Sequence record: LR745206.1
Strand: one strand, 5' to 3'
Length of the DNA stretch: 64,000 nt
Part shown: positions 35,425-60,191 of the stretch, piece after piece
How positions within the stretch are numbered: the stretch's first letter is position 1
How the letters are laid out: each line of letters opens with the position of its first letter
The notes under the pieces: model-generated
Database searches by the model: none
Seen by the model: only the letters and a program-made list of their open reading frames with translations
Told to the model about the DNA's origin: nothing
Made by a program: the position numbers and the translations under genes

Positions 35425-36060
35425 ATGGAAATTAAAATTGATAGTACTTATAAAGGAACAAGAATCCTTTTTGCGGAAACAGCTAAGAGTAAACGTGTTT
35501 TACTAAATGATATGATTGAAATACTTGAATCTTATGGATATCAAGAAATAATGATACCAATCATACAAAAACAAGAAACTTTCGCTTCAAAGGTGGGTGA
35601 TGAAAATCAAAACATGATGTATAACTTTAAAGATAGAGGTAATCGTGATTTATGTTTATCACCAGAGTACACAGCAATTGTTCAACAATTAGCCTCTGAT
35701 AGAATGAAGTTTGATAAAGATGTTAAAATGTTCTACATAGGAGAATGTTTTAGAGGAGAAAATACACAAGCTGGAAGATGGAGACAATTCACACAATTTG
35801 GTGTTGAAGTCTTAAATCCATCTAAAGACTACTCTGATGAAATGATAGAAATTGCTACTAAACTAATTGAATTAGTTACAAAAAATTATGAATTAAACAC
35901 AGACGCAACAAGAGGTCTTGACTACTACAATGGTGGAAAGGGATTTGAAATTGCTTGTCCTGAGTTGGGAGCTGCTAAACAAATTTGTGGGGGAGGTTCT
36001 TATGAAGGAGGTATTGGTTTTGCCGTTGGTGTGGACAGATTACTATTATGCAACAGATAA
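35425..36060 (+). CDS. hisS: Miniature histidyl-tRNA synthetase (catalytic core only)
   Basis: YKGTR, LCLSPEYTA, FRGENTQAGRWRQFTQFGVE, RGLDYY, GGGSY, GFAVGVDR; ends with no anticodon-binding domain. Confidence 0.85.
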   Translation: MEIKIDSTYKGTRILFAETAKSKRVLLNDMIEILESYGYQEIMIPIIQKQETFASKVGDENQNMMYNFKDRGNRDLCLSPEYTAIVQQLASDRMKFDKDVKMFYIGECFRGENTQAGRWRQFTQFGVEVLNPSKDYSDEMIEIATKLIELVTKNYELNTDATRGLDYYNGGKGFEIACPELGAAKQICGGGSYEGGIGFAVGVDRLLLCNR

Positions 36061-36323
36061 GATATTTAAATTTTAATAAAATAGGTGATAGATTTGCATC
36101 AGTTGGTGATAATACCACTGATGTAAAAATAACATTTAAAACAGGAAATGAATTGAGTAATTTCATTAACAGCAATGAATCTATATTTAAGAATATGGAT
36201 TATAAATGTGACACCTCACTATTTAAAATAGTGAAGATTGAAAAAATAAAACACTTTTCTATAATAGCAAAGATAGAAAGAATAACTCTAAGAGAGTATA
36301 ACCTAGAAAGATTATTAACATGA
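36048..36323 (+). CDS. Hypothetical protein
   Basis: 91 aa; C-terminal REYNLERLL. Confidence 0.6.
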   Translation: MQQIRYLNFNKIGDRFASVGDNTTDVKITFKTGNELSNFINSNESIFKNMDYKCDTSLFKIVKIEKIKHFSIIAKIERITLREYNLERLLT

Positions 36324-37033
36324 AAACAAAACAAAGAATAAAAAATTTAAGAAGTATAGCTCCTGATTATCCGAGGATACCTCATTTTTCAAAAGCTATA
36401 TCAAATATGACTCACGATGATATATTAACTGAGTCGAATATACAATTCCCCTTATCTGGTTGGGTACAGGAGAAAGTTGATGGTGCTAATATGGGTATAT
36501 CCTGGACAAGTGGTCCACTTATTAGAAACAGAAATAATATTTTAAAGAAAGGATATATTGATACTGATACACCAGCTAAATTACAATTCAGGCCTGCTTG
36601 GAATTGGATACATGAACATGGACAAGATATTAGAAATATTTCTAAAGAGTTGATGTCTCCTGTGACAATTTATGGTGAGTGGATGTTAGCAAAACATTCA
36701 TTGGAATATGACAAATTAACTGATTGGTTTTTAGCTTATGATATTTATTTATCAGAAGAAAGAAGATTTTTGGCTCCTGATATTTTTGAGGAATTAATGT
36801 CTAAGACTAATATCAAATATATCAAACCAAAGAAGATAATATTTAATAATTTAGATGAGGTTGTTAGATATTCTGAGAAAAATTCAGATTTTAGAAATGG
36901 TAAACAAGAGGGTATCGTTATTAAAATATCTGATGGTAGTTCAGTAACAGATTCTTATAAAGTAGTTAATAAACACTTTATAAGAAGAGAAGATTTTAAT
37001 AAGGAATTAATAAAAAATAAGATTAAGAAATAA
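36320..37033 (+). CDS. ATP-dependent RNA ligase family protein
   Basis: Motif I QEKVDGAN, YGEW, AYDI, EGIVIK. Confidence 0.8.
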   Translation: MKTKQRIKNLRSIAPDYPRIPHFSKAISNMTHDDILTESNIQFPLSGWVQEKVDGANMGISWTSGPLIRNRNNILKKGYIDTDTPAKLQFRPAWNWIHEHGQDIRNISKELMSPVTIYGEWMLAKHSLEYDKLTDWFLAYDIYLSEERRFLAPDIFEELMSKTNIKYIKPKKIIFNNLDEVVRYSEKNSDFRNGKQEGIVIKISDGSSVTDSYKVVNKHFIRREDFNKELIKNKIKK

Positions 37034-37275
37034 TGGCAAATTGGTGGAATAATGTTAAAAGAGTAGATCAGTCTAAAAATGGTAAAAGGTTTTATACTTC
37101 CTTTGATATGTCAGAGGCTAAGAGAATGGAATCAATTCTTAACTCTAGAATAAAAAGAGGTGAAATACCTGCTAAGTTTAATCAATATATGTGTGATTGT
37201 GGATGTGGTGCAAGTGGATGTATAATTGTTAGTCAGTATGGTGAAATTATAAATAATTATGAAAACATATCCTAA
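37033..37275 (+). CDS. Hypothetical protein with CDCGC..C motif
   Basis: 80 aa ORF. Confidence 0.6.
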   Translation: MANWWNNVKRVDQSKNGKRFYTSFDMSEAKRMESILNSRIKRGEIPAKFNQYMCDCGCGASGCIIVSQYGEIINNYENIS

Positions 37276-37909
37276 AATAGAATATTATAATAAAGGTTTC
37301 TTTGGAGATACTGTTTATGCCTTTGATAAATTAGATGGATCTAATATAAGAGCTGAATGGAATAAAAAAAGAGGTTGGTATAAGTTTGGTACAAGAAAAC
37401 AAATGATAGATGAGAATGATCCAAACTTTGGAGATGCTATACCTATCTTCTTAAATAAGTATGGTGATGATTTAGAAAAGGTGTTTAGAAAGACATATTC
37501 TAACATACAGAATGTTGTCATTTTTGGTGAGTATGTAGGTGAGAATTCATTCAGTGGTCAACACAAAGAAGAGGATGAAAAGGACGTAGTTTTGTTTGAT
37601 GTGAATCTATATAAGAAAGGATTTATATCACCTAAGGATTTTTACAACAACTTTGGACATTTACATATACCTAATTTGGTTTATAAAGGTGTGTATGATG
37701 AAGACTTAATTAAAGATATTAGGAATAATAAAACTTTAAAAGAAGGTGTTATTTGTAAAGGAATTAGGAAAACAAAAGGTGATGAAATTGTTTGGATGAC
37801 TAAAATAAAAACTATTGATTGGTTAAATAAAGTTAAATCACTTTATGGTGAAAAAGCATTATTGGAAGAATTAAATAGTGATAAAAATTTACTATCTGAT
37901 TGTTTTTAA
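37259..37909 (+). CDS. RNA ligase family protein (second copy)
   Basis: Motif I FDKLDGSN, FGEY, LFDV, EGVICK, TKIK. Confidence 0.8.
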   Translation: MKTYPKIEYYNKGFFGDTVYAFDKLDGSNIRAEWNKKRGWYKFGTRKQMIDENDPNFGDAIPIFLNKYGDDLEKVFRKTYSNIQNVVIFGEYVGENSFSGQHKEEDEKDVVLFDVNLYKKGFISPKDFYNNFGHLHIPNLVYKGVYDEDLIKDIRNNKTLKEGVICKGIRKTKGDEIVWMTKIKTIDWLNKVKSLYGEKALLEELNSDKNLLSDCF

Positions 37910-54941: not shown

Positions 54942-55028
54942 CTAAAAAATATTAAAATAAATTAGGTAGATTAGAAAAAACTACTTATATTTGTAAAAGA
55001 ATTAATAAACAAGATAATAAATAAACAA

Positions 55029-55187: not shown

Positions 55188-55255
55188 GGGATGAATTATG
55201 GTGATAGCCGGGTCTGTAAAACCCTAGCAGGTGAGTTCGAGTCTCACACATCCCA
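55188..55255 (+). tRNA. tRNA-Tyr (GTA), atypical short form
   Basis: GGGT-CT-GTA-AA-ACCC; truncated D arm, short variable loop. Confidence 0.65.
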
Positions 55256-55523: not shown

Positions 55524-55647
55524 GGTGATGTAGAGCAATTGGTAGCTCATCTGCTAGTTAAATGATGGAATAATCATAATCCTGAAGCTATTATAAAATA
55601 GGCGACACGGTTGGTTCTTGGTGTAGGTTCGAGTCCTATCATCACTA
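55524..55647 (+). ncRNA. tRNA-like RNA with a large insertion replacing the anticodon arm
   Basis: Acceptor GGTGATG/CATCACT, D arm GAGC-AATTGGTA-GCTC, T arm GTAGG-TTCGAGT-CCTAT; about 70 nt insert with small hairpins. Confidence 0.6.
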
Positions 55648-57171: not shown

Positions 57172-57912
57172 ATGGAAACATTATATAACATAAATAGTTT
57201 AGTAATCTGGGAAGAAAAGGATCTTAGGATTAGAAAGTTCATAGAGGATACTATGAAAGAGGAAATTAAAACAATATTACTCTCTCAGAATCCAGCTTGG
57301 AAATTCTATCAGATTGAAGCTCCTTGTCTTATACCAAGAGATTTGGTTAATGAGAATTATACCAATGAAGATATTTGGGTACAAGAAACAAAAGATGATG
57401 AAGTTGAATTGGTATTAAAACCTGAAACAACACCAAGTTCTTATGTATATGCTCAACACTTGTTAAATACAAATAGATGTCTACCACCACTTGTTGTTTG
57501 GCAAACATCTAAATCTTTTAGAAGAGAACAAGACCAAGTGATGAAGAATATGAGATTGAAAGAGTTTTATCAACAAGAGTTTCAATGTGTTTATTCAGCA
57601 AGTACACTGAATGATTATCAAGAAAATGTTCTTGAACCAATCAGAAAAATGTTGGAAGATATAATCGCTCTACCAACAAGGATAGTTGAGAGTGATAGAT
57701 TACCTTCTTATAGCCTAAGAACAATGGATATAGAAGTTTATAATGATGATAAATGGATGGAGATTTGTTCAATATCAAAAAGAACCGATTTTCCACAAAA
57801 AGCAGTATTTACTGTTAAGAACAAAGTTATCGAGACTGATTTATTGGTACTTGAAATAGCATTGGGTGTTGATAGAGTATTGTATAATTATATGAAACGA
57901 ATAAATAAATAA
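57172..57912 (+). CDS. Miniature glycyl-tRNA synthetase-like class II catalytic core
   Basis: LKPETT, motif 2 KSFRRE..MRLKEFYQQEFQ, WMEICS, motif 3 LGVDR; ends with no anticodon-binding domain. Confidence 0.75.
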   Translation: METLYNINSLVIWEEKDLRIRKFIEDTMKEEIKTILLSQNPAWKFYQIEAPCLIPRDLVNENYTNEDIWVQETKDDEVELVLKPETTPSSYVYAQHLLNTNRCLPPLVVWQTSKSFRREQDQVMKNMRLKEFYQQEFQCVYSASTLNDYQENVLEPIRKMLEDIIALPTRIVESDRLPSYSLRTMDIEVYNDDKWMEICSISKRTDFPQKAVFTVKNKVIETDLLVLEIALGVDRVLYNYMKRINK

Positions 57913-57929: not shown

Positions 57930-58804
57930 ATGAAAAGGCTGGACGCATTTTAGTCACAGAAGAATATAAATCTTACTGTGACGTTAATAAAATTAAATTT
58001 AAAGTAGAAGAAAGTGTTAAATCTTATGATGATACGACATTATTTTGTCCATCAGGGATGCAACAATTCAAATCTAATTTCAAGGACGAGAATTATAAAG
58101 GAACAATATCCAATATTCAATCTTGTTTGAGATTGAATGATATAGATGAAATAGGTGATGGAACACACCTACTATATTTTAATATGATTGGATTCTTCTC
58201 ATTTAGAGAGTGGACTGTTCCACAAACAATTGATTATTGGATGGAATTCCTTAACTTAATAGGAATTAAACCTGATTATGTTACAATACACCCAACTAAA
58301 CCAGAATGGAGTGAGTGGTATAAAAAATATGAAGTTGAAGTAAGGTTTGATGAAGAGTGTAAATGGACAGATGGTGATATTGGTGGATATTGTACCGAAT
58401 TTTATAAAGATGATATAGAAATAGGTAATATTGTTAATCCACTTGGTACCTGTATAGATGTCGGATTCGGCTTAGAAAGATTGAAAATGGTTTTAGACAA
58501 CCAAATAGTTAGTAAAGAAGATACTCTAAAAGAAAGTATTATGAAAATAATAGAGAGTGGATTCAGACCAGGAAATAATAAACAAGGATATATTTTAAGA
58601 AAACTTCTTAGATTATGTCACCAAAATAAAATAGAAATAGAACATCCGTTTTATATGGATGAAGTAAAAAGACAGGAGAAGATATTAGAGAAGTGGGGTA
58701 AGTTAAAAAATAAACACAATGATAAATCAAAGGAATGGTGGTGGGACACACATGGTATTGATTTAGATTTTATAAAAGAAATTGAAAAAAATGAAAATAT
58801 TTAA
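57930..58804 (+). CDS. alaS: Miniature alanyl-tRNA synthetase (N-terminal catalytic domain), start uncertain
   Basis: YDDTTLFCPSGMQQFK, QSCLR..D, H..YFNMIG, EIGNIV, IDVGFGLERL, GYILRKLLR; the conserved motif lies upstream of the track start 58058. Confidence 0.8.
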
Positions 58805-58957: not shown

Positions 58958-59030
58958 GCGAGAATAGCTCAGTTGGTAGAGCGCCACCTTGCCAAGGTGG
59001 AGGTCGCGGGTTCGAGCCCCGTTTCTCGCT
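58958..59030 (+). tRNA. tRNA-Gly (GCC)
   Basis: CCACC-TT-GCC-AA-GGTGG; canonical cloverleaf. Confidence 0.92.
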
Positions 59031-59045
59031 CAAGATAGTAGTAAT

Positions 59046-59157
59046 GAGAAGTGTTACTTCGACTGCAATTCGACTAGTCCAGGTTCGAATCCTGGCACCG
59101 GCTCAAATAAATAATGTCGGTGTGGTGTAATGGTAGCACAGTAATAACACACTTCTC
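59046..59157 (+). tRNA. Circularly permuted tRNA-Cys (GCA) gene candidate
   Basis: 3' half (59059-59103) precedes 5' half (59116-59141); acceptor GTCGGTG/CACCGGC, U73, flanks GAGAAGTGT/ACACTTCTC. Confidence 0.7.
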
Positions 59158-59175
59158 AAATTTTCTCTATCTAAT

Positions 59176-59249
59176 GGGGGATTAGCTCAGTTGGCTAGAG
59201 CGCCTGCCTTGCACGCAGGAGGCCATCGGTTCGAATCCGATATCCTCCA
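59176..59249 (+). tRNA. tRNA-Ala (TGC)
   Basis: CCTGC-CT-TGC-AC-GCAGG; G3.U70. Confidence 0.92.
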
Positions 59250-59375
59250 CAAAATATTAGGATATGTGGAAAATATTCTTATATTTGTATAAATAATTTA
59301 TAAACTATCATTTTTCTTTGTCAAAAGGAGAATAAAAAATTTCAAAGAGATTTGAAAAAAAAGAAAAATGTAGTT

Positions 59376-60191
59376 ATGAAAAAAGACAACTTCGGAGACC
59401 GTATGAAAATGTACGAATCTCAAACCTGTGGAATTAAACTTATTCCCAGAATTCCTGTAATCGCTCGTTTAGATGGAAAAGGATTTTCCAAATTTACAAA
59501 AGGACTAAAAAGACCTTATGACGAGAGACTATCCAATCTTATGATTGAAACTGTTAAGTATCTTGTAAAAGAGACTAATGCTAATTGTGGTTATACTCAA
59601 TCTGATGAGATCACTCTGGTTTGGTATACTGATAAGATAGATGCTTCAATTTATTTTGATGGTAGACTTTTCAAGATGTTAAGTGATTTATCTGCTATGG
59701 CTTCTGTTTATTTCAATAGAAGACTTGGTGAATTTCTTCCAGAAAAAATTGATAAGATGCCTAGATTTGATGCTCGTGTTTATAATGTTCCTACTTTAGA
59801 TGAGGCAGTTAACTCTTTCCTTTGGAGAGAACAAGATGCTACTAAAAACTCTATTAGTATGGCGGCACAAGCTTTCTATTCTCACAAGCAACTAATGGGT
59901 AAGAACGGAAGTGATAAACAAGAGATGCTTTTTGAAAAAGGTGTTAATTGGAATGATTACCCATCATTCTTCAAAAGAGGAACTTATATTCAAAGAAAAA
60001 GAATTGTAACTCCTTTCAGTATTGAGGAAATTGAGAAACTTCCACCTAAACACAATGCTAGAAAGGATCCAAATTATTGTGTTGAAAGATGGGTTATTGA
60101 TAAAATCAATCTACCACCACTTTCTAAAATTGATAATAAAATTGGTGTTATTGTTTTTGGTGAAGATGTAAAATTAAAAAGTCCAGTTTAA
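59376..60191 (+). CDS. Thg1-like tRNA(His) guanylyltransferase / 3'-5' polymerase
   Basis: ARLDGKGFSKF, KRPYD, YTQSDEI, FDARV, WREQDA.KNSI; start ATG 59376. Confidence 0.92.
   Translation: MKKDNFGDRMKMYESQTCGIKLIPRIPVIARLDGKGFSKFTKGLKRPYDERLSNLMIETVKYLVKETNANCGYTQSDEITLVWYTDKIDASIYFDGRLFKMLSDLSAMASVYFNRRLGEFLPEKIDKMPRFDARVYNVPTLDEAVNSFLWREQDATKNSISMAAQAFYSHKQLMGKNGSDKQEMLFEKGVNWNDYPSFFKRGTYIQRKRIVTPFSIEEIEKLPPKHNARKDPNYCVERWVIDKINLPPLSKIDNKIGVIVFGEDVKLKSPV

What the first reader, a model, noticed from the sequence alone, without database searches (positions are those of the whole stretch)
59046..59157. Circularly permuted tRNA-Cys gene in a phage
Seen: the order is 3' half (TCGA-CT-GCA-AT-TCGAC-TAGT-CCAGG-TTCGAAT-CCTGG-CACCGGC-T), a 12-nt spacer, then the 5' half (GTCGGTG-TG-GTGT-AATGGTA-GCAC-A-G). 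Joining G59141 to T59059 completes a 5-bp anticodon stem and a 71-nt cloverleaf with U73 and a 4-nt variable loop as in bacterial tRNA-Cys. The flanks pair (GAGAAGT/ACTTCTC plus GTTACT/AGTAAT), holding the junction in a helix where the needed cuts are staggered by 2 nt with a 3' overhang. Established: permuted tRNAs are known from red/green algae and one archaeon, and two-piece permuted tmRNAs from bacteria. I know of none in phages. Inference: matured by an RNase III-like cut plus a phage RNA ligase, or functional as a two-piece tRNA.
Basis: partly seen in the sequence, partly recalled or inferred. Interest (0 to 1): 0.87.

Follow-up and report, generated by a model that had tools for sequence, protein, structure and literature searches.

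The report
tRNA-shaped Y RNA in huge phage
This is a real, conserved RNA gene laid out like a tRNA opened at the anticodon stem and closed at the acceptor end, but it belongs to the known family of tRNA-mimicking Y RNAs that partner the Ro60 protein (which this phage also encodes), and is not a scrambled tRNA-Cys gene.

Summary
Window 59059-59141 carries a tRNA 3' half, a 12-nt spacer and a 5' half. Joined, they give a 71-nt cloverleaf that ARAGORN calls tRNA-Cys(GCA).

The same permuted layout defines YrlA-type Y RNAs, described in bacteria and phages since 2014 as resembling "circularly permuted tRNAs with closed acceptor stems".

- **Family match.** A covariance model built only from 10 viral-contig RNAs lying next to Ro60 (TROVE + vWA) genes hits window 59027-59172 at 89.9 bits (E 5e-21). 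Nothing else in the 634-kb genome scores above tRNA noise.
- **Partner protein.** The phage encodes its own Ro60 homologue 127 kb upstream.
- **Structure.** Covariation in 23 relatives supports every helix, including the single pair (G59141:C59074) that completes the anticodon-like stem.
- **Not a Cys identity.** The two closest orthologues carry UUC in that loop with the same U73. Other members carry at least 12 further triplets. The junction helix proposed as an RNase III site does not covary. A standard tRNA-Cys gene exists elsewhere in the genome.

Best reading: a divergent Y RNA released from a tRNA-Gly/tRNA-Ala array, possibly cut by RNase P in its spacer-like acceptor loop. It is a new member of a known kind, of moderate interest.

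The parts
58958..59031 (+). tRNA-Gly(GCC), upstream neighbour; its 3' processing would set the 5' end of the element
   Evidence: ARAGORN; Rfam tRNA 71.7 bits. A tRNA-Gly-like gene also sits directly upstream of the element in L153; in L183 only a tRNA-like 3' end is visible there.
59033..59038 (+). Outer-stem 5' strand AGATAG, pairing with CTATCT 59167-59172
   Evidence: Direct reading and the MFE fold. L190 and L181 have A(G/A)ACTG with CAGTTT at the same place, a compensatory change.
59035..59044 (+). AUAGUAGUAA with a GUAG core, at the place where YrlA has the Ro60-contact motif GNCGAA(N)G
   Evidence: Ro60-adjacent relatives have CCGTAGA, GCGTAGG or GTGTAGG, or canonical G(G/T)CGAAG, at the equivalent 5' position. 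Motif definition is from PMC4201824. That this is the binding site is inferred.
59046..59053 (+). Middle-stem 5' strand GAGAAGUG, pairing with CACUUCUC 59150-59157
   Evidence: L153 and L183 have GAGTG with CACTC, i.e. 3 bp shorter on both strands.
59054..59057 (+). UUAC, matching the conserved YUAY motif of YrlA; UUA can pair with UAA 59142-59144
   Evidence: GTTAYY is near-invariant in the 23-sequence alignment. YUAY is defined in PMC4201824. UUA/UAA is pairable in 16 of 23.
59059..59074 (+). Anticodon-arm mimic (called the 'V' stem-loop in YrlA): UCGA / CUGCAAU / UCGA plus C59074, which pairs in trans with G59141
   Evidence: Hairpin stem: 4 of 4 pairs show changes on both sides. Trans pair is formed in 22 of 23 sequences with 4 pair types. 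Fourteen loops that I parsed by eye as 7 nt all have U at position 2, and 13 have a purine at position 6 (my reading), while the triplet varies.
59075..59078 (+). Variable loop UAGU; U59078 (position 48) can form the Levitt pair with A59130 (position 15)
   Evidence: TAGT is near-invariant. The A15:U48 alternative is noted for YrlA in PMC4201824.
59079..59095 (+). T arm CCAGG-UUCGAAU-CCUGG
   Evidence: 100% paired in relatives, with 3 of 5 pairs covarying.
59096..59122 (+). Closed acceptor stem: CACCGGC, then loop U73-CAAAUAAAUAAU, then GUCGGUG
   Evidence: 7 bp. Seven of 7 pairs have compensatory changes in relatives. The loop begins N73-CAA, like 49 of this phage's 59 tRNA trailers (background CAA frequency 0.019), and ends ..AAU like its leaders.
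59123..59141 (+). U8-G9, D arm GUGU-AAUGGUA-GCAC, A26, G27
   Evidence: The D arm is invariant or covarying in relatives.
59142..59172 (+). 3' strand of the stem: UAA, bulge UAACA (59145-59149), CACUUCUC (59150-59157), internal loop, CUAUCU (59167-59172)
   Evidence: The bulge is AAACA in L153 and L183. The motif AAUUUUCUC is conserved in L153, L183, L190 and L181.
59176..59250 (+). tRNA-Ala(UGC), downstream neighbour; RNase P cleavage at its 5' end would set the 3' end of the element
   Evidence: ARAGORN; Rfam tRNA 72.4 bits. No + strand promoter-like or terminator-like site lies between the three genes.
59352..60191 (+). Thg1-like 3'-5' nucleotidyltransferase (tRNA 5'-end repair), next gene downstream. 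Context only, not part of the RNA.
   Evidence: Pfam Thg1 E 3.1e-29. 64-83% identical copies were used to find related phages.
36320..37909 (+). Two small RNA-ligase-domain ORFs (36320-37033 and 37259-37909). RNA-repair context, 22 kb away.
   Evidence: Pfam RNA_ligase E 3e-23 and 1.6e-10.

Best explanation
The element (about 59033-59175) is the phage's Y RNA of the YrlA type: a non-coding RNA whose effector module is a tRNA look-alike with permuted connectivity.

Proposed mechanism, with each step marked as shown or inferred:
1. It is transcribed with tRNA-Gly(GCC) and tRNA-Ala(UGC). Its ends are set by the processing of those two tRNAs. (Inferred.)
2. Its 5' and 3' ends pair into a long bulged stem carrying a GUAG-type variant of the Ro60-contact motif. 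(The stem is shown; binding is inferred.)
3. The interior folds into an L-shaped tRNA mimic. It has a T arm, a D arm and a 7-bp acceptor stem closed by a loop. Its anticodon-arm mimic has a stem made of 4 local pairs plus one pair formed in trans. (The secondary structure is shown by covariation.)
4. The stem binds the phage-encoded Ro60 homologue at LR745206.1 241,087-242,538. The tRNA-like module then recruits a tRNA-binding partner. In characterised systems Y RNA tethers Ro60 to PNPase for decay or quality control of structured or damaged RNA. (Inferred by homology.)
5. The acceptor loop looks exactly like one of this phage's inter-tRNA spacers. RNase P probably can cut before G59116, and the 3' end could then be trimmed and receive CCA, as shown for M. 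smegmatis YrlA. That would give a two-piece molecule held together by the acceptor stem and the terminal stem. (Inferred.)

No cutting and religation into a linear tRNA-Cys is needed or expected.
For: **Family membership**
- The best Rfam match to the encoded order is YrlA, over the full model.
- Model R2 was built only from 10 RNAs lying directly next to TROVE + Ro60-vWA genes. It hits window 59027-59172 at 89.9 bits, E 5e-21, end to end. It is the only hit in the 634-kb genome above tRNA-level noise of at most 27.5 bits.
- Model R1, built from 25 other viral elements, gives 68 bits.

**Partner protein**
- The phage encodes a Ro60 homologue: HMM E 5.8e-81, 35% identity to a Ro60 gene that sits beside such an RNA, and Pfam TROVE 61.6 bits against a cut-off of 23.

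**Structure**
- 95% of cells are paired against 65.6% in shuffles and 39-49% in slid controls; 17 of 21 pairs have double changes.
- The YrlA hallmarks are present: YUAY, a V stem-loop, T and D arms, and a closed acceptor stem (PMC4201824; bioRxiv 10.1101/312249).

**The loop triplet is not conserved**
- The syntenic orthologues have UUC.
- Joined family members get 13 different three-base anticodons.

**Acceptor loops mimic tRNA 3' ends**
- N73-CCA opens the loop in L190, L181, L196, L188, L170, L080 and L091.
- N73-CAA opens it in the window, matching 49 of 59 of its own tRNAs.

**Literature**
- Phage Ro60/Y RNA pairs and their complex with PNPase are documented (PMC12135203; PMC7824862).
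Against: - The Rfam YrlA score is far below gathering (20.7 against 69 bits).
- The canonical Ro60-contact motif GNCGAA(N)G is absent; the window has AUAGUAG.
- The Ro60 gene is 127 kb away, not adjacent, and no Ro60 or DUF2828 gene is in the window.
- The relatives were fished with patterns taken from the window. The T arm, GTTAYY and TAGT parts of the match to R2 (about 21 nt) are therefore there by construction; only the D arm, acceptor stem, trans pair and 3' flank are independent.
- No expression, end-mapping or binding data exist for this uncultured phage.
- The module is more tRNA-like than characterised YrlA. It has a full anticodon-arm mimic with U33 and R37, U73 with GCA, and a spacer-like acceptor loop. 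A tRNA-type activity is therefore not excluded.
Confidence: 0.8

Rival explanations
1. A true circularly permuted tRNA-Cys gene. The precursor is cut at U59058|U59059 and after G59141 by an RNase III-like enzyme and joined by a phage RNA ligase. It is then opened at the acceptor end by RNase P and 3' processing, giving a normal decoding tRNA-Cys.
For: - The joined sequence is a good 71-nt cloverleaf with GCA, U33, A37 and U73.
- Two RNA-ligase-domain ORFs and a Thg1-like gene are in the window.
- The acceptor loop resembles a tRNA spacer.
- The only standard-order tRNA-Cys in the genome is odd: C33, no GG in the D loop, 47 bits.
Against: - The syntenic orthologues L153 and L183 keep U73 but have UUC, one of them with C37. 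Family triplets are unrelated to N73 (my own tally).
- The junction helix needed for the staggered cut is not conserved: 60.2% paired against 60.1% in shuffles. C59057 and G59141 can pair here, but the same two positions pair in only 5 of 19 relatives, whereas G27 pairs with N43 in 22 of 23.
- There is no bulge-helix-bulge motif.
- The terminal stem, its bulge and its flanking motifs are conserved, as expected for a retained protein-binding stem rather than a discarded leader and trailer.
- Relatives are linked to Ro60 genes.
Confidence: 0.04
2. A two-piece tRNA-like molecule with a tRNA-type activity of its own. [quoted passage not shown] The RNA is then charged (here by CysRS), or it serves as a decoy or sensor for host tRNA-targeting nucleases. 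This could be with or without Ro60.
For: - M. smegmatis YrlA, which also has a 7-bp acceptor stem, is cut by RNase P and receives CCA (PMC4201824; bioRxiv 10.1101/312249).
- Seven relatives encode N73-CCA at the start of the loop, and the window encodes its own phage's N73-CAA trailer.
- Fourteen hairpin loops that parse as 7 nt all keep U33, and 13 keep R37, while the triplet varies freely.
- The window combination of U73 and GCA matches the main CysRS identity elements (established knowledge).
Against: - The triplet and N73 agree with bacterial identity rules in only about a third of members, roughly chance level (my tally).
- Many members have 4-nt acceptor loops (UUCG, CCUG, GAAA) that cannot be good RNase P substrates.
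- No charging has been reported for any YrlA.
- The retained stem would clash with ribosomal decoding.
Confidence: 0.1
3. A non-functional relic: two tandem tRNA copies that lost their outer halves, or a rearranged pseudogene.
For: Tandem duplication followed by loss is the textbook route to permuted tRNA genes. Duplicated tRNAs are common in this array.
Against: - The same architecture is kept across more than 40 viral contigs with compensatory changes in every helix.
- Orthologues occur at the same position in two related huge phages.
- The fold is significantly stable, z = -4.75.
Confidence: 0.02

Closest known systems
[quoted passage not shown] 2014, PMC4201824; Wang et al. 2018, bioRxiv 10.1101/312249)
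   Same: - The order of parts is identical: terminal stem, YUAY, V stem-loop, T arm, closed acceptor stem, UR, D arm, terminal stem.
- The tertiary-interaction nucleotides are tRNA-like, including the A15:U48 option.
- The partner is Ro60.
- The family was explicitly described as resembling circularly permuted tRNAs.
   Different: - The score is 20.7 bits against a gathering score of 69.
- The D arm is GUGU..GCAC, not GCUC..GAGC.
- GUAG stands in place of CGAAG.
- S. Typhimurium YrlA 'lacks the anticodon loop' and its anticodon-equivalent stem runs straight into the Ro60 stem. Here a complete 5-bp/7-nt anticodon-arm mimic is present and the Ro60 stem branches off between positions 27 and 28.
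- The gene sits in a tRNA array, 127 kb from the Ro60 gene.
Mycobacterium smegmatis YrlA
   Same: A 7-bp acceptor stem. It is shown to be cut by RNase P, trimmed and given CCA, which produces a two-piece tRNA-like RNA. This is the best precedent for what the spacer-like loop 59103-59115 suggests.
   Different: Processing here is only inferred. That gene is next to rsr in a bacterial chromosome.
Thermus phage phiLo Ro60 with Yrl1 and Yrl2 (PMC12135203); TROVE proteins with a tRNA-like partner in jumbo phages (PMC7824862)
   Same: A phage-encoded Ro60 together with phage-encoded Y-like RNAs. The proposed role is RNA repair or quality control, or hijacking of host PNPase.
   Different: The phiLo Yrls are adjacent to the Ro60 gene and carry the CGAA motif. 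No tRNA-array context is described.
Circularly permuted tRNA genes of Cyanidioschyzon merolae, other algae and Thermofilum pendens
   Same: The 3' half lies upstream of the 5' half, and the joined product is a normal cloverleaf.
   Different: - Those genes use a bulge-helix-bulge motif, the splicing endonuclease, a circular intermediate and then RNase P/Z.
- Their anticodons are conserved and needed for decoding.
- None of these features is seen here.
Two-piece (permuted) tmRNA
   Same: A permuted tRNA-like domain matured into two base-paired pieces.
   Different: The window element has no tag reading frame and no pseudoknots. ARAGORN in tmRNA mode reports nothing in the genome.

Membership tests
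YrlA-type Y RNA | Nearly invariant tRNA-like T stem-loop (GGUUCGAnUCC) | tested here: met
   59079-59095. The stem is 100% paired in relatives.
YrlA-type Y RNA | tRNA-like D stem-loop after a UR dinucleotide | tested here: met
   59123-59139. This D-arm sequence type is shared with Ro60-adjacent members; the GCUC..GAGC type occurs in sibling copies.
YrlA-type Y RNA | Acceptor-like stem between the T and D arms, closed by a loop | tested here: met
   7 bp at 59096-59102 with 59116-59122. Seven of 7 pairs covary. Correct partners give 6.77 pairs on average against 3.87 for permuted partners.
YrlA-type Y RNA | Conserved YUAY ahead of a V stem-loop upstream of the T arm | tested here: met
   UUAC 59054-59057, then the hairpin 59059-59073.
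YrlA-type Y RNA | 5' motif GNCGAA(N)G that contacts Ro60 | tested here: inconclusive
   The window has AUAGUAG at 59035-59041. Ro60-adjacent relatives range from GGCGAAG and GTCGAAG to CCGTAGA and GTGTAGG. The core G-A/U-A-G is shared but the exact motif is not.
YrlA-type Y RNA | Encoded next to a Ro60 (TROVE) gene | tested here: not met
   - No TROVE or DUF2828 hit was listed among the window ORFs of 150 aa or more. One search lists only 25 of its 30 families, so a weak hit could be hidden.
- The phage's Ro60 gene is at LR745206.1 241,087-242,538, 127 kb upstream.
- Adjacency does hold for at least 10 of 14 related loci.
YrlA-type Y RNA | Reaches the Rfam RF02553 gathering score | tested here: not met
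   20.7 bits against 69. Relatives beside DUF2828 genes also stay below it, at 30-46 bits. A family-specific model gives 89.9 bits.
YrlA-type Y RNA | Binds Ro60 and tethers an effector such as PNPase | not testable with these tools
   Needs EMSA or co-purification.
Circularly permuted tRNA gene (algal/archaeal type) | 3' half upstream of the 5' half; joined product is a cloverleaf | tested here: met
Circularly permuted tRNA gene (algal/archaeal type) | Bulge-helix-bulge motif (or another conserved cleavage helix) at the junction of the termini | tested here: not met
There are no 3-nt bulges flanking a 4-bp helix.
Circularly permuted tRNA gene (algal/archaeal type) | Anticodon and identity elements conserved in orthologues | tested here: not met
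   The window has GCA; L153 and L183 have UUC with the same U73. The family gives 13 different three-base anticodons.
Circularly permuted tRNA gene (algal/archaeal type) | Supplies a tRNA otherwise missing from the gene set | tested here: not met
   The 59 standard tRNAs cover all 20 amino acids and include tRNA-Cys(GCA) at 270,989-271,059.
Circularly permuted tRNA gene (algal/archaeal type) | Circular intermediate and ligated mature tRNA | not testable with these tools
   Needs RNA data.
Two-piece tmRNA | Tag-peptide reading frame and pseudoknots beside the tRNA-like domain | tested here: not met
   ARAGORN with the tmRNA option finds none in the genome. The 144-nt segment has no room for them.

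The most novel reading that the evidence does not exclude
In this viral branch of the Y RNA family the tRNA-like module may be a complete, permuted tRNA rather than a partial mimic.

- It has a 5-bp anticodon stem with one pair made in trans.
- It has a 7-nt loop with conserved U33 and R37, and a freely changing triplet.
- In many members the acceptor loop encodes N73-CCA, or the phage's own trailer.

If RNase P opens that loop in vivo, the products would be two-piece tRNAs tethered to Ro60. They could be charged. They could also act as bait or sensors for host anticodon nucleases, which would explain why the triplet diversifies. The window copy (U73 with GCA) would then be a Cys-type bait or acceptor.
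Probability: 0.12. Interest if true: 0.8.

Novelty: new member of a known kind. Interest (0 to 1): 0.36.

Why it matters
- **It corrects the reading.** This is not the first permuted tRNA gene of a phage. It is the Y RNA partner of a huge phage's Ro60 protein.
- **Detection gap.** Rfam's YrlA model misses these RNAs, scoring 20-46 bits against a threshold of 69. Dozens of viral contigs nevertheless carry them inside tRNA arrays. One large group is linked to DUF2828 proteins and carries a CAGCAA motif instead of CGAAG. Two family-specific models are now available for annotating them.
- **Gene linkage.** The Y RNA gene can be unlinked from the Ro60 gene and embedded in a tRNA operon, so its ends would come for free from tRNA processing.
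- **Biological setting.** The context of tRNA arrays, Thg1-like and RNA-ligase genes, and truncated aaRS paralogues fits a phage RNA-repair and quality-control toolkit aimed at host attacks on tRNA.
- **An open question made testable.** The covarying trans pair and the tRNA-spacer-like acceptor loop give a concrete way to ask what the tRNA-like module of Y RNAs is for.

Tried and rejected
- **Synteny.** Of 7 phages with 64-83% identical Thg1, only L153 keeps the element. In L156 tRNA-Gly and tRNA-Ala are 5 nt apart, and L154 has a different odd tRNA-like sequence.
- **DUF2828 as the partner protein.** It is absent from the window genome by tblastn and by HMM (best E 0.11). The real partner turned out to be a TROVE protein.
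- **PDB sequence search with a DUF2828 protein.** No hit.
- **Listing all Pfam families of 86 genome ORFs at once.** Only 25 of 118 families are shown, so this could not settle whether TROVE was present.
- **GCA as a real anticodon.** An alternative was considered in which UGCAA is a GNRA-type tetraloop. In the DUF2828-linked cluster the loop is CU-GNRA-A in 4 of 5 variants, and L097 can form CUCUU-GCAA-AGGAG. In the window's own subgroup, however, the loops are YU-NNN-RA with non-GNRA triplets. Neither a fixed anticodon nor GNRA explains them all.
- **Identity rules.** Matching each triplet to its N73 gives agreement in only about a third of cases (my tally).
- **Standard-order tRNA-Cys.** One is present, though atypical. 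'Fills a gap in the tRNA set' is therefore rejected.
- **Odd tRNA at 55524-55647.** ARAGORN's intron mode gave an unconvincing tRNA-Ser(ACU) model. It is left unexplained.
Full report
**Source and observation**

The window is positions 310,001-374,000 of LR745206.1, an unannotated 634,780-bp 'uncultured phage' assembly. Its G+C content is 29.7% and it has no N.

The finding lies between tRNA-Gly(GCC) 58958-59031 and tRNA-Ala(UGC) 59176-59250. In order, it has an anticodon-type hairpin, a 4-nt variable loop, a T arm, the acceptor 3' strand with U73, 12 nt of A/T-rich spacer, the acceptor 5' strand, U8-G9, a D arm, then A and G.

Joining 59116-59141 to 59059-59103 gives a 71-nt cloverleaf that ARAGORN calls tRNA-Cys(GCA). 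In the encoded order neither ARAGORN nor the Rfam tRNA model sees it.

GAGAAGUG 59046-53 pairs with CACUUCUC 59150-57, and AGAUAG 59033-38 pairs with CUAUCU 59167-72. The whole inter-tRNA segment therefore folds as one rod with the tRNA-like module at its tip (-44 kcal/mol, z = -4.75, 0 of 200 shuffles as stable).

**What it resembles in the encoded order**

A narrow Rfam scan gives YrlA (RF02553, 'Y RNA-like') as the best match. It covers the whole model but scores far below threshold (20.7 bits, E 0.021, gathering score 69).

YrlA RNAs were described by Chen et al. 2014 (PMC4201824). They have a terminal stem with a 5' GNCGAA(N)G motif that contacts Ro60, and a conserved YUAY. A 'V' stem-loop lies upstream of a nearly invariant T stem-loop. 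An acceptor-like stem closed by a loop follows, and then a nearly invariant D stem-loop.

Wang et al. [quoted passage not shown] They also report that M. smegmatis YrlA, which has a 7-bp acceptor stem, is cut by RNase P, trimmed and given CCA.

Chen et al. found such RNAs next to Ro60 genes in bacteria and phages. A phage Ro60/Y-like RNA/PNPase complex has since been characterised (PMC12135203). TROVE proteins 'with a tRNA-like partner' are noted in jumbo phages (PMC7824862).

**Relatives, first round**

A pattern taken from the T loop and D arm found four viral contigs with the same permuted order. A looser pattern found 119 stretches. These split cleanly into two groups:

- About 30 stretches had 6-7 complementary acceptor pairs and no overlapping ARAGORN tRNA.
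- The rest were ordinary tandem tRNAs with 5 pairs or fewer.

All of the permuted elements lie inside phage tRNA arrays. Most sit 80-250 nt downstream of a sibling element with the YrlA-consensus D arm GCUC..GAGC.

Structure counts on 25 distinct sequences, without the window, give 91.9% of cells paired. Shuffles give 72.4% and slid controls about 46%. Compensatory changes occur in 20 of 28 pairs, including the terminal helix.

The acceptor stem occurs in 17 distinct versions. Correct partners give 6.77 pairs on average, against 3.87 for permuted partners.

In this group, at least 12 loci carry a protein of about 472 aa with DUF2828 and DUF7788 domains within 0.2-5 kb. That protein is found in 711 cultured-phage records, where RefSeq names it 'RNA-binding protein'. 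It is detectably related to Ro60 (E 4e-12 to 2e-4 against a Ro60 HMM).

**Relatives, second round (the window's own subgroup)**

A pattern from the 5' part (GTTAYY..TAGTNNNGGTTCGANTCC) was screened with model R1. This gave about 17 further elements.

In at least 10 of 14 such loci the neighbouring ORF is a TROVE + Ro60-vWA protein. Pfam shows this for L162, L182, L196, L177, L174, L191, L173 and L170. The HMM adds L169 and L188.

I built model R2 from only 10 of these Ro60-adjacent RNAs. It hits window 59027-59172 at 89.9 bits, E 5e-21, over all 142 model positions. Nothing else in the 634-kb genome, which I fetched as L123-L135, exceeds tRNA-level noise of 27.5 bits.

One caveat applies. About 21 nt of that match (GTTAYY, TAGT and the T loop) are shared by construction. 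The D arm, the acceptor stem, the trans pair and the 3' flank are independent.

**The phage has the partner protein**

A Ro60 HMM built from the relatives finds one strong hit in the genome, L127:41087-42538 (+), which is LR745206.1 241,087-242,538. The E-value is 5.8e-81, with 35% identity to the L196 Ro60. Pfam gives TROVE at 61.6 bits against a cut-off of 23, plus vWA.

No Y-like RNA lies beside that gene. The element in the window is the only candidate partner, 127 kb away.

**Structure in detail**

On the 23-sequence alignment made with R2, 95.0% of cells are paired. Shuffles give 65.6% and slid controls 39-49%. Seventeen of 21 pairs show changes on both sides.

Per helix, pairs showing changes on both sides:

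| Helix | Pairs with double changes |
|---|---|
| Acceptor stem | 7 of 7 |
| T stem | 3 of 5 |
| Hairpin stem | 4 of 4 |

The nucleotide two positions after the D stem (G59141) pairs with the nucleotide just after the hairpin (C59074). Across the family this pair is GC 12, CG 6, AU 3, UA 1, formed in 22 of 23 sequences.

The hairpin therefore forms a 5-bp stem, with 4 local pairs and 1 trans pair. Fourteen members parse by eye with a 7-nt loop. All 14 have U at loop position 2, and 13 have a purine at position 6 (my reading).

This is a more complete anticodon-arm mimic than in S. Typhimurium YrlA, which 'lacks the anticodon loop'. The terminal stem branches off between positions 27 and 28.

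It is 60.2% paired against 60.1% in shuffles. The C59057:G59141 pair it requires is formed in only 5 of 19 relatives.

**Why it is not a tRNA-Cys gene**

1. Two related huge-phage contigs carry the orthologue with the same 5' and 3' flanking sequences. These are L153/L160 (476 kb, Thg1 82% identical) and L183 (385 kb). In L153 it sits between a tRNA-Gly-like and a tRNA-Ala-like sequence. Both orthologues share the window's outer helix, bulge and U73-CAA. Their hairpin stem has changed in a compensatory way (UCGU/ACGA). Their loop is AUUUCCA or AUUUCAA, i.e. 'UUC', once with a pyrimidine at position 37. Their acceptor stem is entirely different (GCGGGAU/GUUCCGC).
2. Twenty-one of 23 family members, joined in the same way, are called tRNAs by ARAGORN. 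Eighteen get a standard three-base anticodon, 13 different ones: His, Pro, Leu, Arg, Gln, Ser (two), Ile, Cys, Glu, Gly, Asn, Thr and Met. These include the RNAs next to Ro60 genes. 'Cys' is one draw among many.
3. The triplet and N73 fit bacterial identity rules in only about a third of cases (my own tally).
4. The genome's 59 standard tRNAs cover all 20 amino acids. They include a tRNA-Cys(GCA) at 270,989-271,059, which scores 47 bits and is atypical (C33).
5. There is no bulge-helix-bulge motif.

**What may still be tRNA-like in its life cycle**

The acceptor loop is not arbitrary. In this phage 49 of 59 tRNA genes are followed by N73-CAA, where the background frequency of CAA is 0.019, and leaders typically end in AAU. 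The element's loop is U73-CAAAUAAAUAAU.

In phages whose tRNA genes encode CCA, several relatives begin the loop with N73-CCA. These are L190, L181, L196, L188, L170, L080 and L091. That is about 7 of roughly 18 loops of 4 nt or more, where about 0.3 would be expected by chance.

Together with the M. smegmatis precedent, this makes RNase P cleavage before G59116 plausible. It would yield a two-piece RNA. Other members have 4-nt loops (UUCG, CCUG, GAAA) and must stay closed.

There is no + strand promoter-like or terminator-like site between the three genes (Bacteroidota-type promoters are not covered by that scan). Co-transcription with the flanking tRNAs, and release by their processing, is therefore the simplest route to the RNA's ends. 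This step is inferred.

**Context**

The window is rich in translation and RNA-repair genes:

- 24 tRNAs.
- A Thg1-like gene directly downstream at 59352-60191.
- Truncated class II aaRS paralogues at 57172-57912, 58058-58804 and 35425-36060.
- Two small RNA-ligase-domain ORFs at 36320-37909.
- A full class II aaRS (tRNA-synt_2 family: D, K and N), an NAD-dependent DNA ligase and an S1-domain protein.

This matches the RNA-repair setting in which Ro60/Y RNA systems are discussed (PMC7790460; PMC7824862).

**Verdict**

It is a permuted tRNA-like RNA, and the two acceptor strands do covary. However, it is a divergent member of the YrlA Y RNA family, not a permuted tRNA-Cys gene matured by cutting and ligation.

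Confidence in the Y RNA reading is 0.8. The main gaps are the non-canonical Ro60 motif, the unlinked Ro60 gene, and the lack of any expression or binding data.

Noticed in passing
window 55524-55647 (+): The Rfam tRNA model matches at 40.9 bits with good acceptor, D and T arms, but about 62 nt sit where the anticodon arm should be. ARAGORN does not call it, and its intron mode gives an unconvincing tRNA-Ser(ACU) with a 31-nt intron. It could be an intron-containing or otherwise unusual tRNA.
   Followed up: partly
window 55188-55255 (+): A weak tRNA-like match (21.6 bits, below the gathering score) with a reduced D arm and a CUGUAAA loop, at the head of the Glu/Tyr tRNA array.
   Followed up: no
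whole genome LR745206.1 (L123-L135 plus the window): 49 of 59 tRNA genes are followed by N73-C-A-A (mostly CAAA) instead of CCA, so C74 is encoded but C75 is not. This suggests a uniform 3'-end processing or CCA-repair signal in this phage.
   Followed up: partly
L128:20989-21059 (LR745206.1 270,989-271,059): An isolated standard-order tRNA-Cys(GCA), far from all the arrays. It has C33 instead of U33 and no GG in the D loop (Rfam 47 bits).
   Followed up: partly
L130:33364-33437 and L130:45836-45923 (LR745206.1 about 407.4 kb and 419.8 kb): ARAGORN calls two tRNAs with irregular anticodon loops, a 4-base 'gtag' and a 2-base 'gt'. They may be frameshift-type or degenerate tRNAs.
   Followed up: no
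window 59280-59287, and similar sites near 54990 and 55965; L153-L156 upstream of Thg1: The motif TAnnTTTG (for example TATATTTG) recurs upstream of genes. From memory it resembles the Bacteroidota -7 promoter element. The gene next to the orthologue in L153 has a CHU_C type IX secretion sorting domain. Both hint at a Bacteroidota host.
   Followed up: no
window 57172-57912, 58058-58804, 35425-36060: Short (211-248 aa) catalytic-core fragments of class II aminoacyl-tRNA synthetases (Gly/His/Pro/Ser/Thr type, AlaRS type, HisRS type) next to tRNA arrays. They are stand-alone paralogues of unknown role.
   Followed up: no
L002-L122 (for example L003:5700-5925, L011:2097-2470, L028): A large group of paired tRNA-like RNAs sits in phage tRNA arrays, linked to DUF2828/DUF7788 proteins. 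They carry a conserved 5' YCAGCAA and a 3' CCUGUUA in place of the CGAAG motif, and a fixed acceptor loop UUGGUC. Their hairpin loop is CU-GNRA-A in 4 of 5 variants. Rfam YrlA scores them at 30-46 bits only. Several tRNAs in L028 are followed directly by the same TTTAGGAT start, so there may be many copies per genome.
   Followed up: partly
L097:9680-9990 (498-kb viral contig; same as L141): Tandem Y-like units start with GTCGAAGGATGG. One has the loop UUGCAAA (GCA, or a GCAA tetraloop), the next has CUGUAAA and an interrupted acceptor stem. A stray 5' half follows tRNA-Gln. A CysRS gene lies 6 kb upstream.
   Followed up: partly
L153:61-98: GCCGGAUGAUCCACCGUUGAAUCGCGGUGCCGGCUCCA looks like an acceptor/T-arm minihelix ending in U-CCA, lying between two tRNAs.
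   Followed up: no
L153:181-258 and L153:410-480; L154:3755-3835: The tRNA-Gly-like and tRNA-Ala-like sequences flanking the orthologue, and another sequence after tRNA-Ala in L154, are not called by ARAGORN. They have inserts or weak arms. Irregular tRNA-like genes seem common in this phage group.
   Followed up: no
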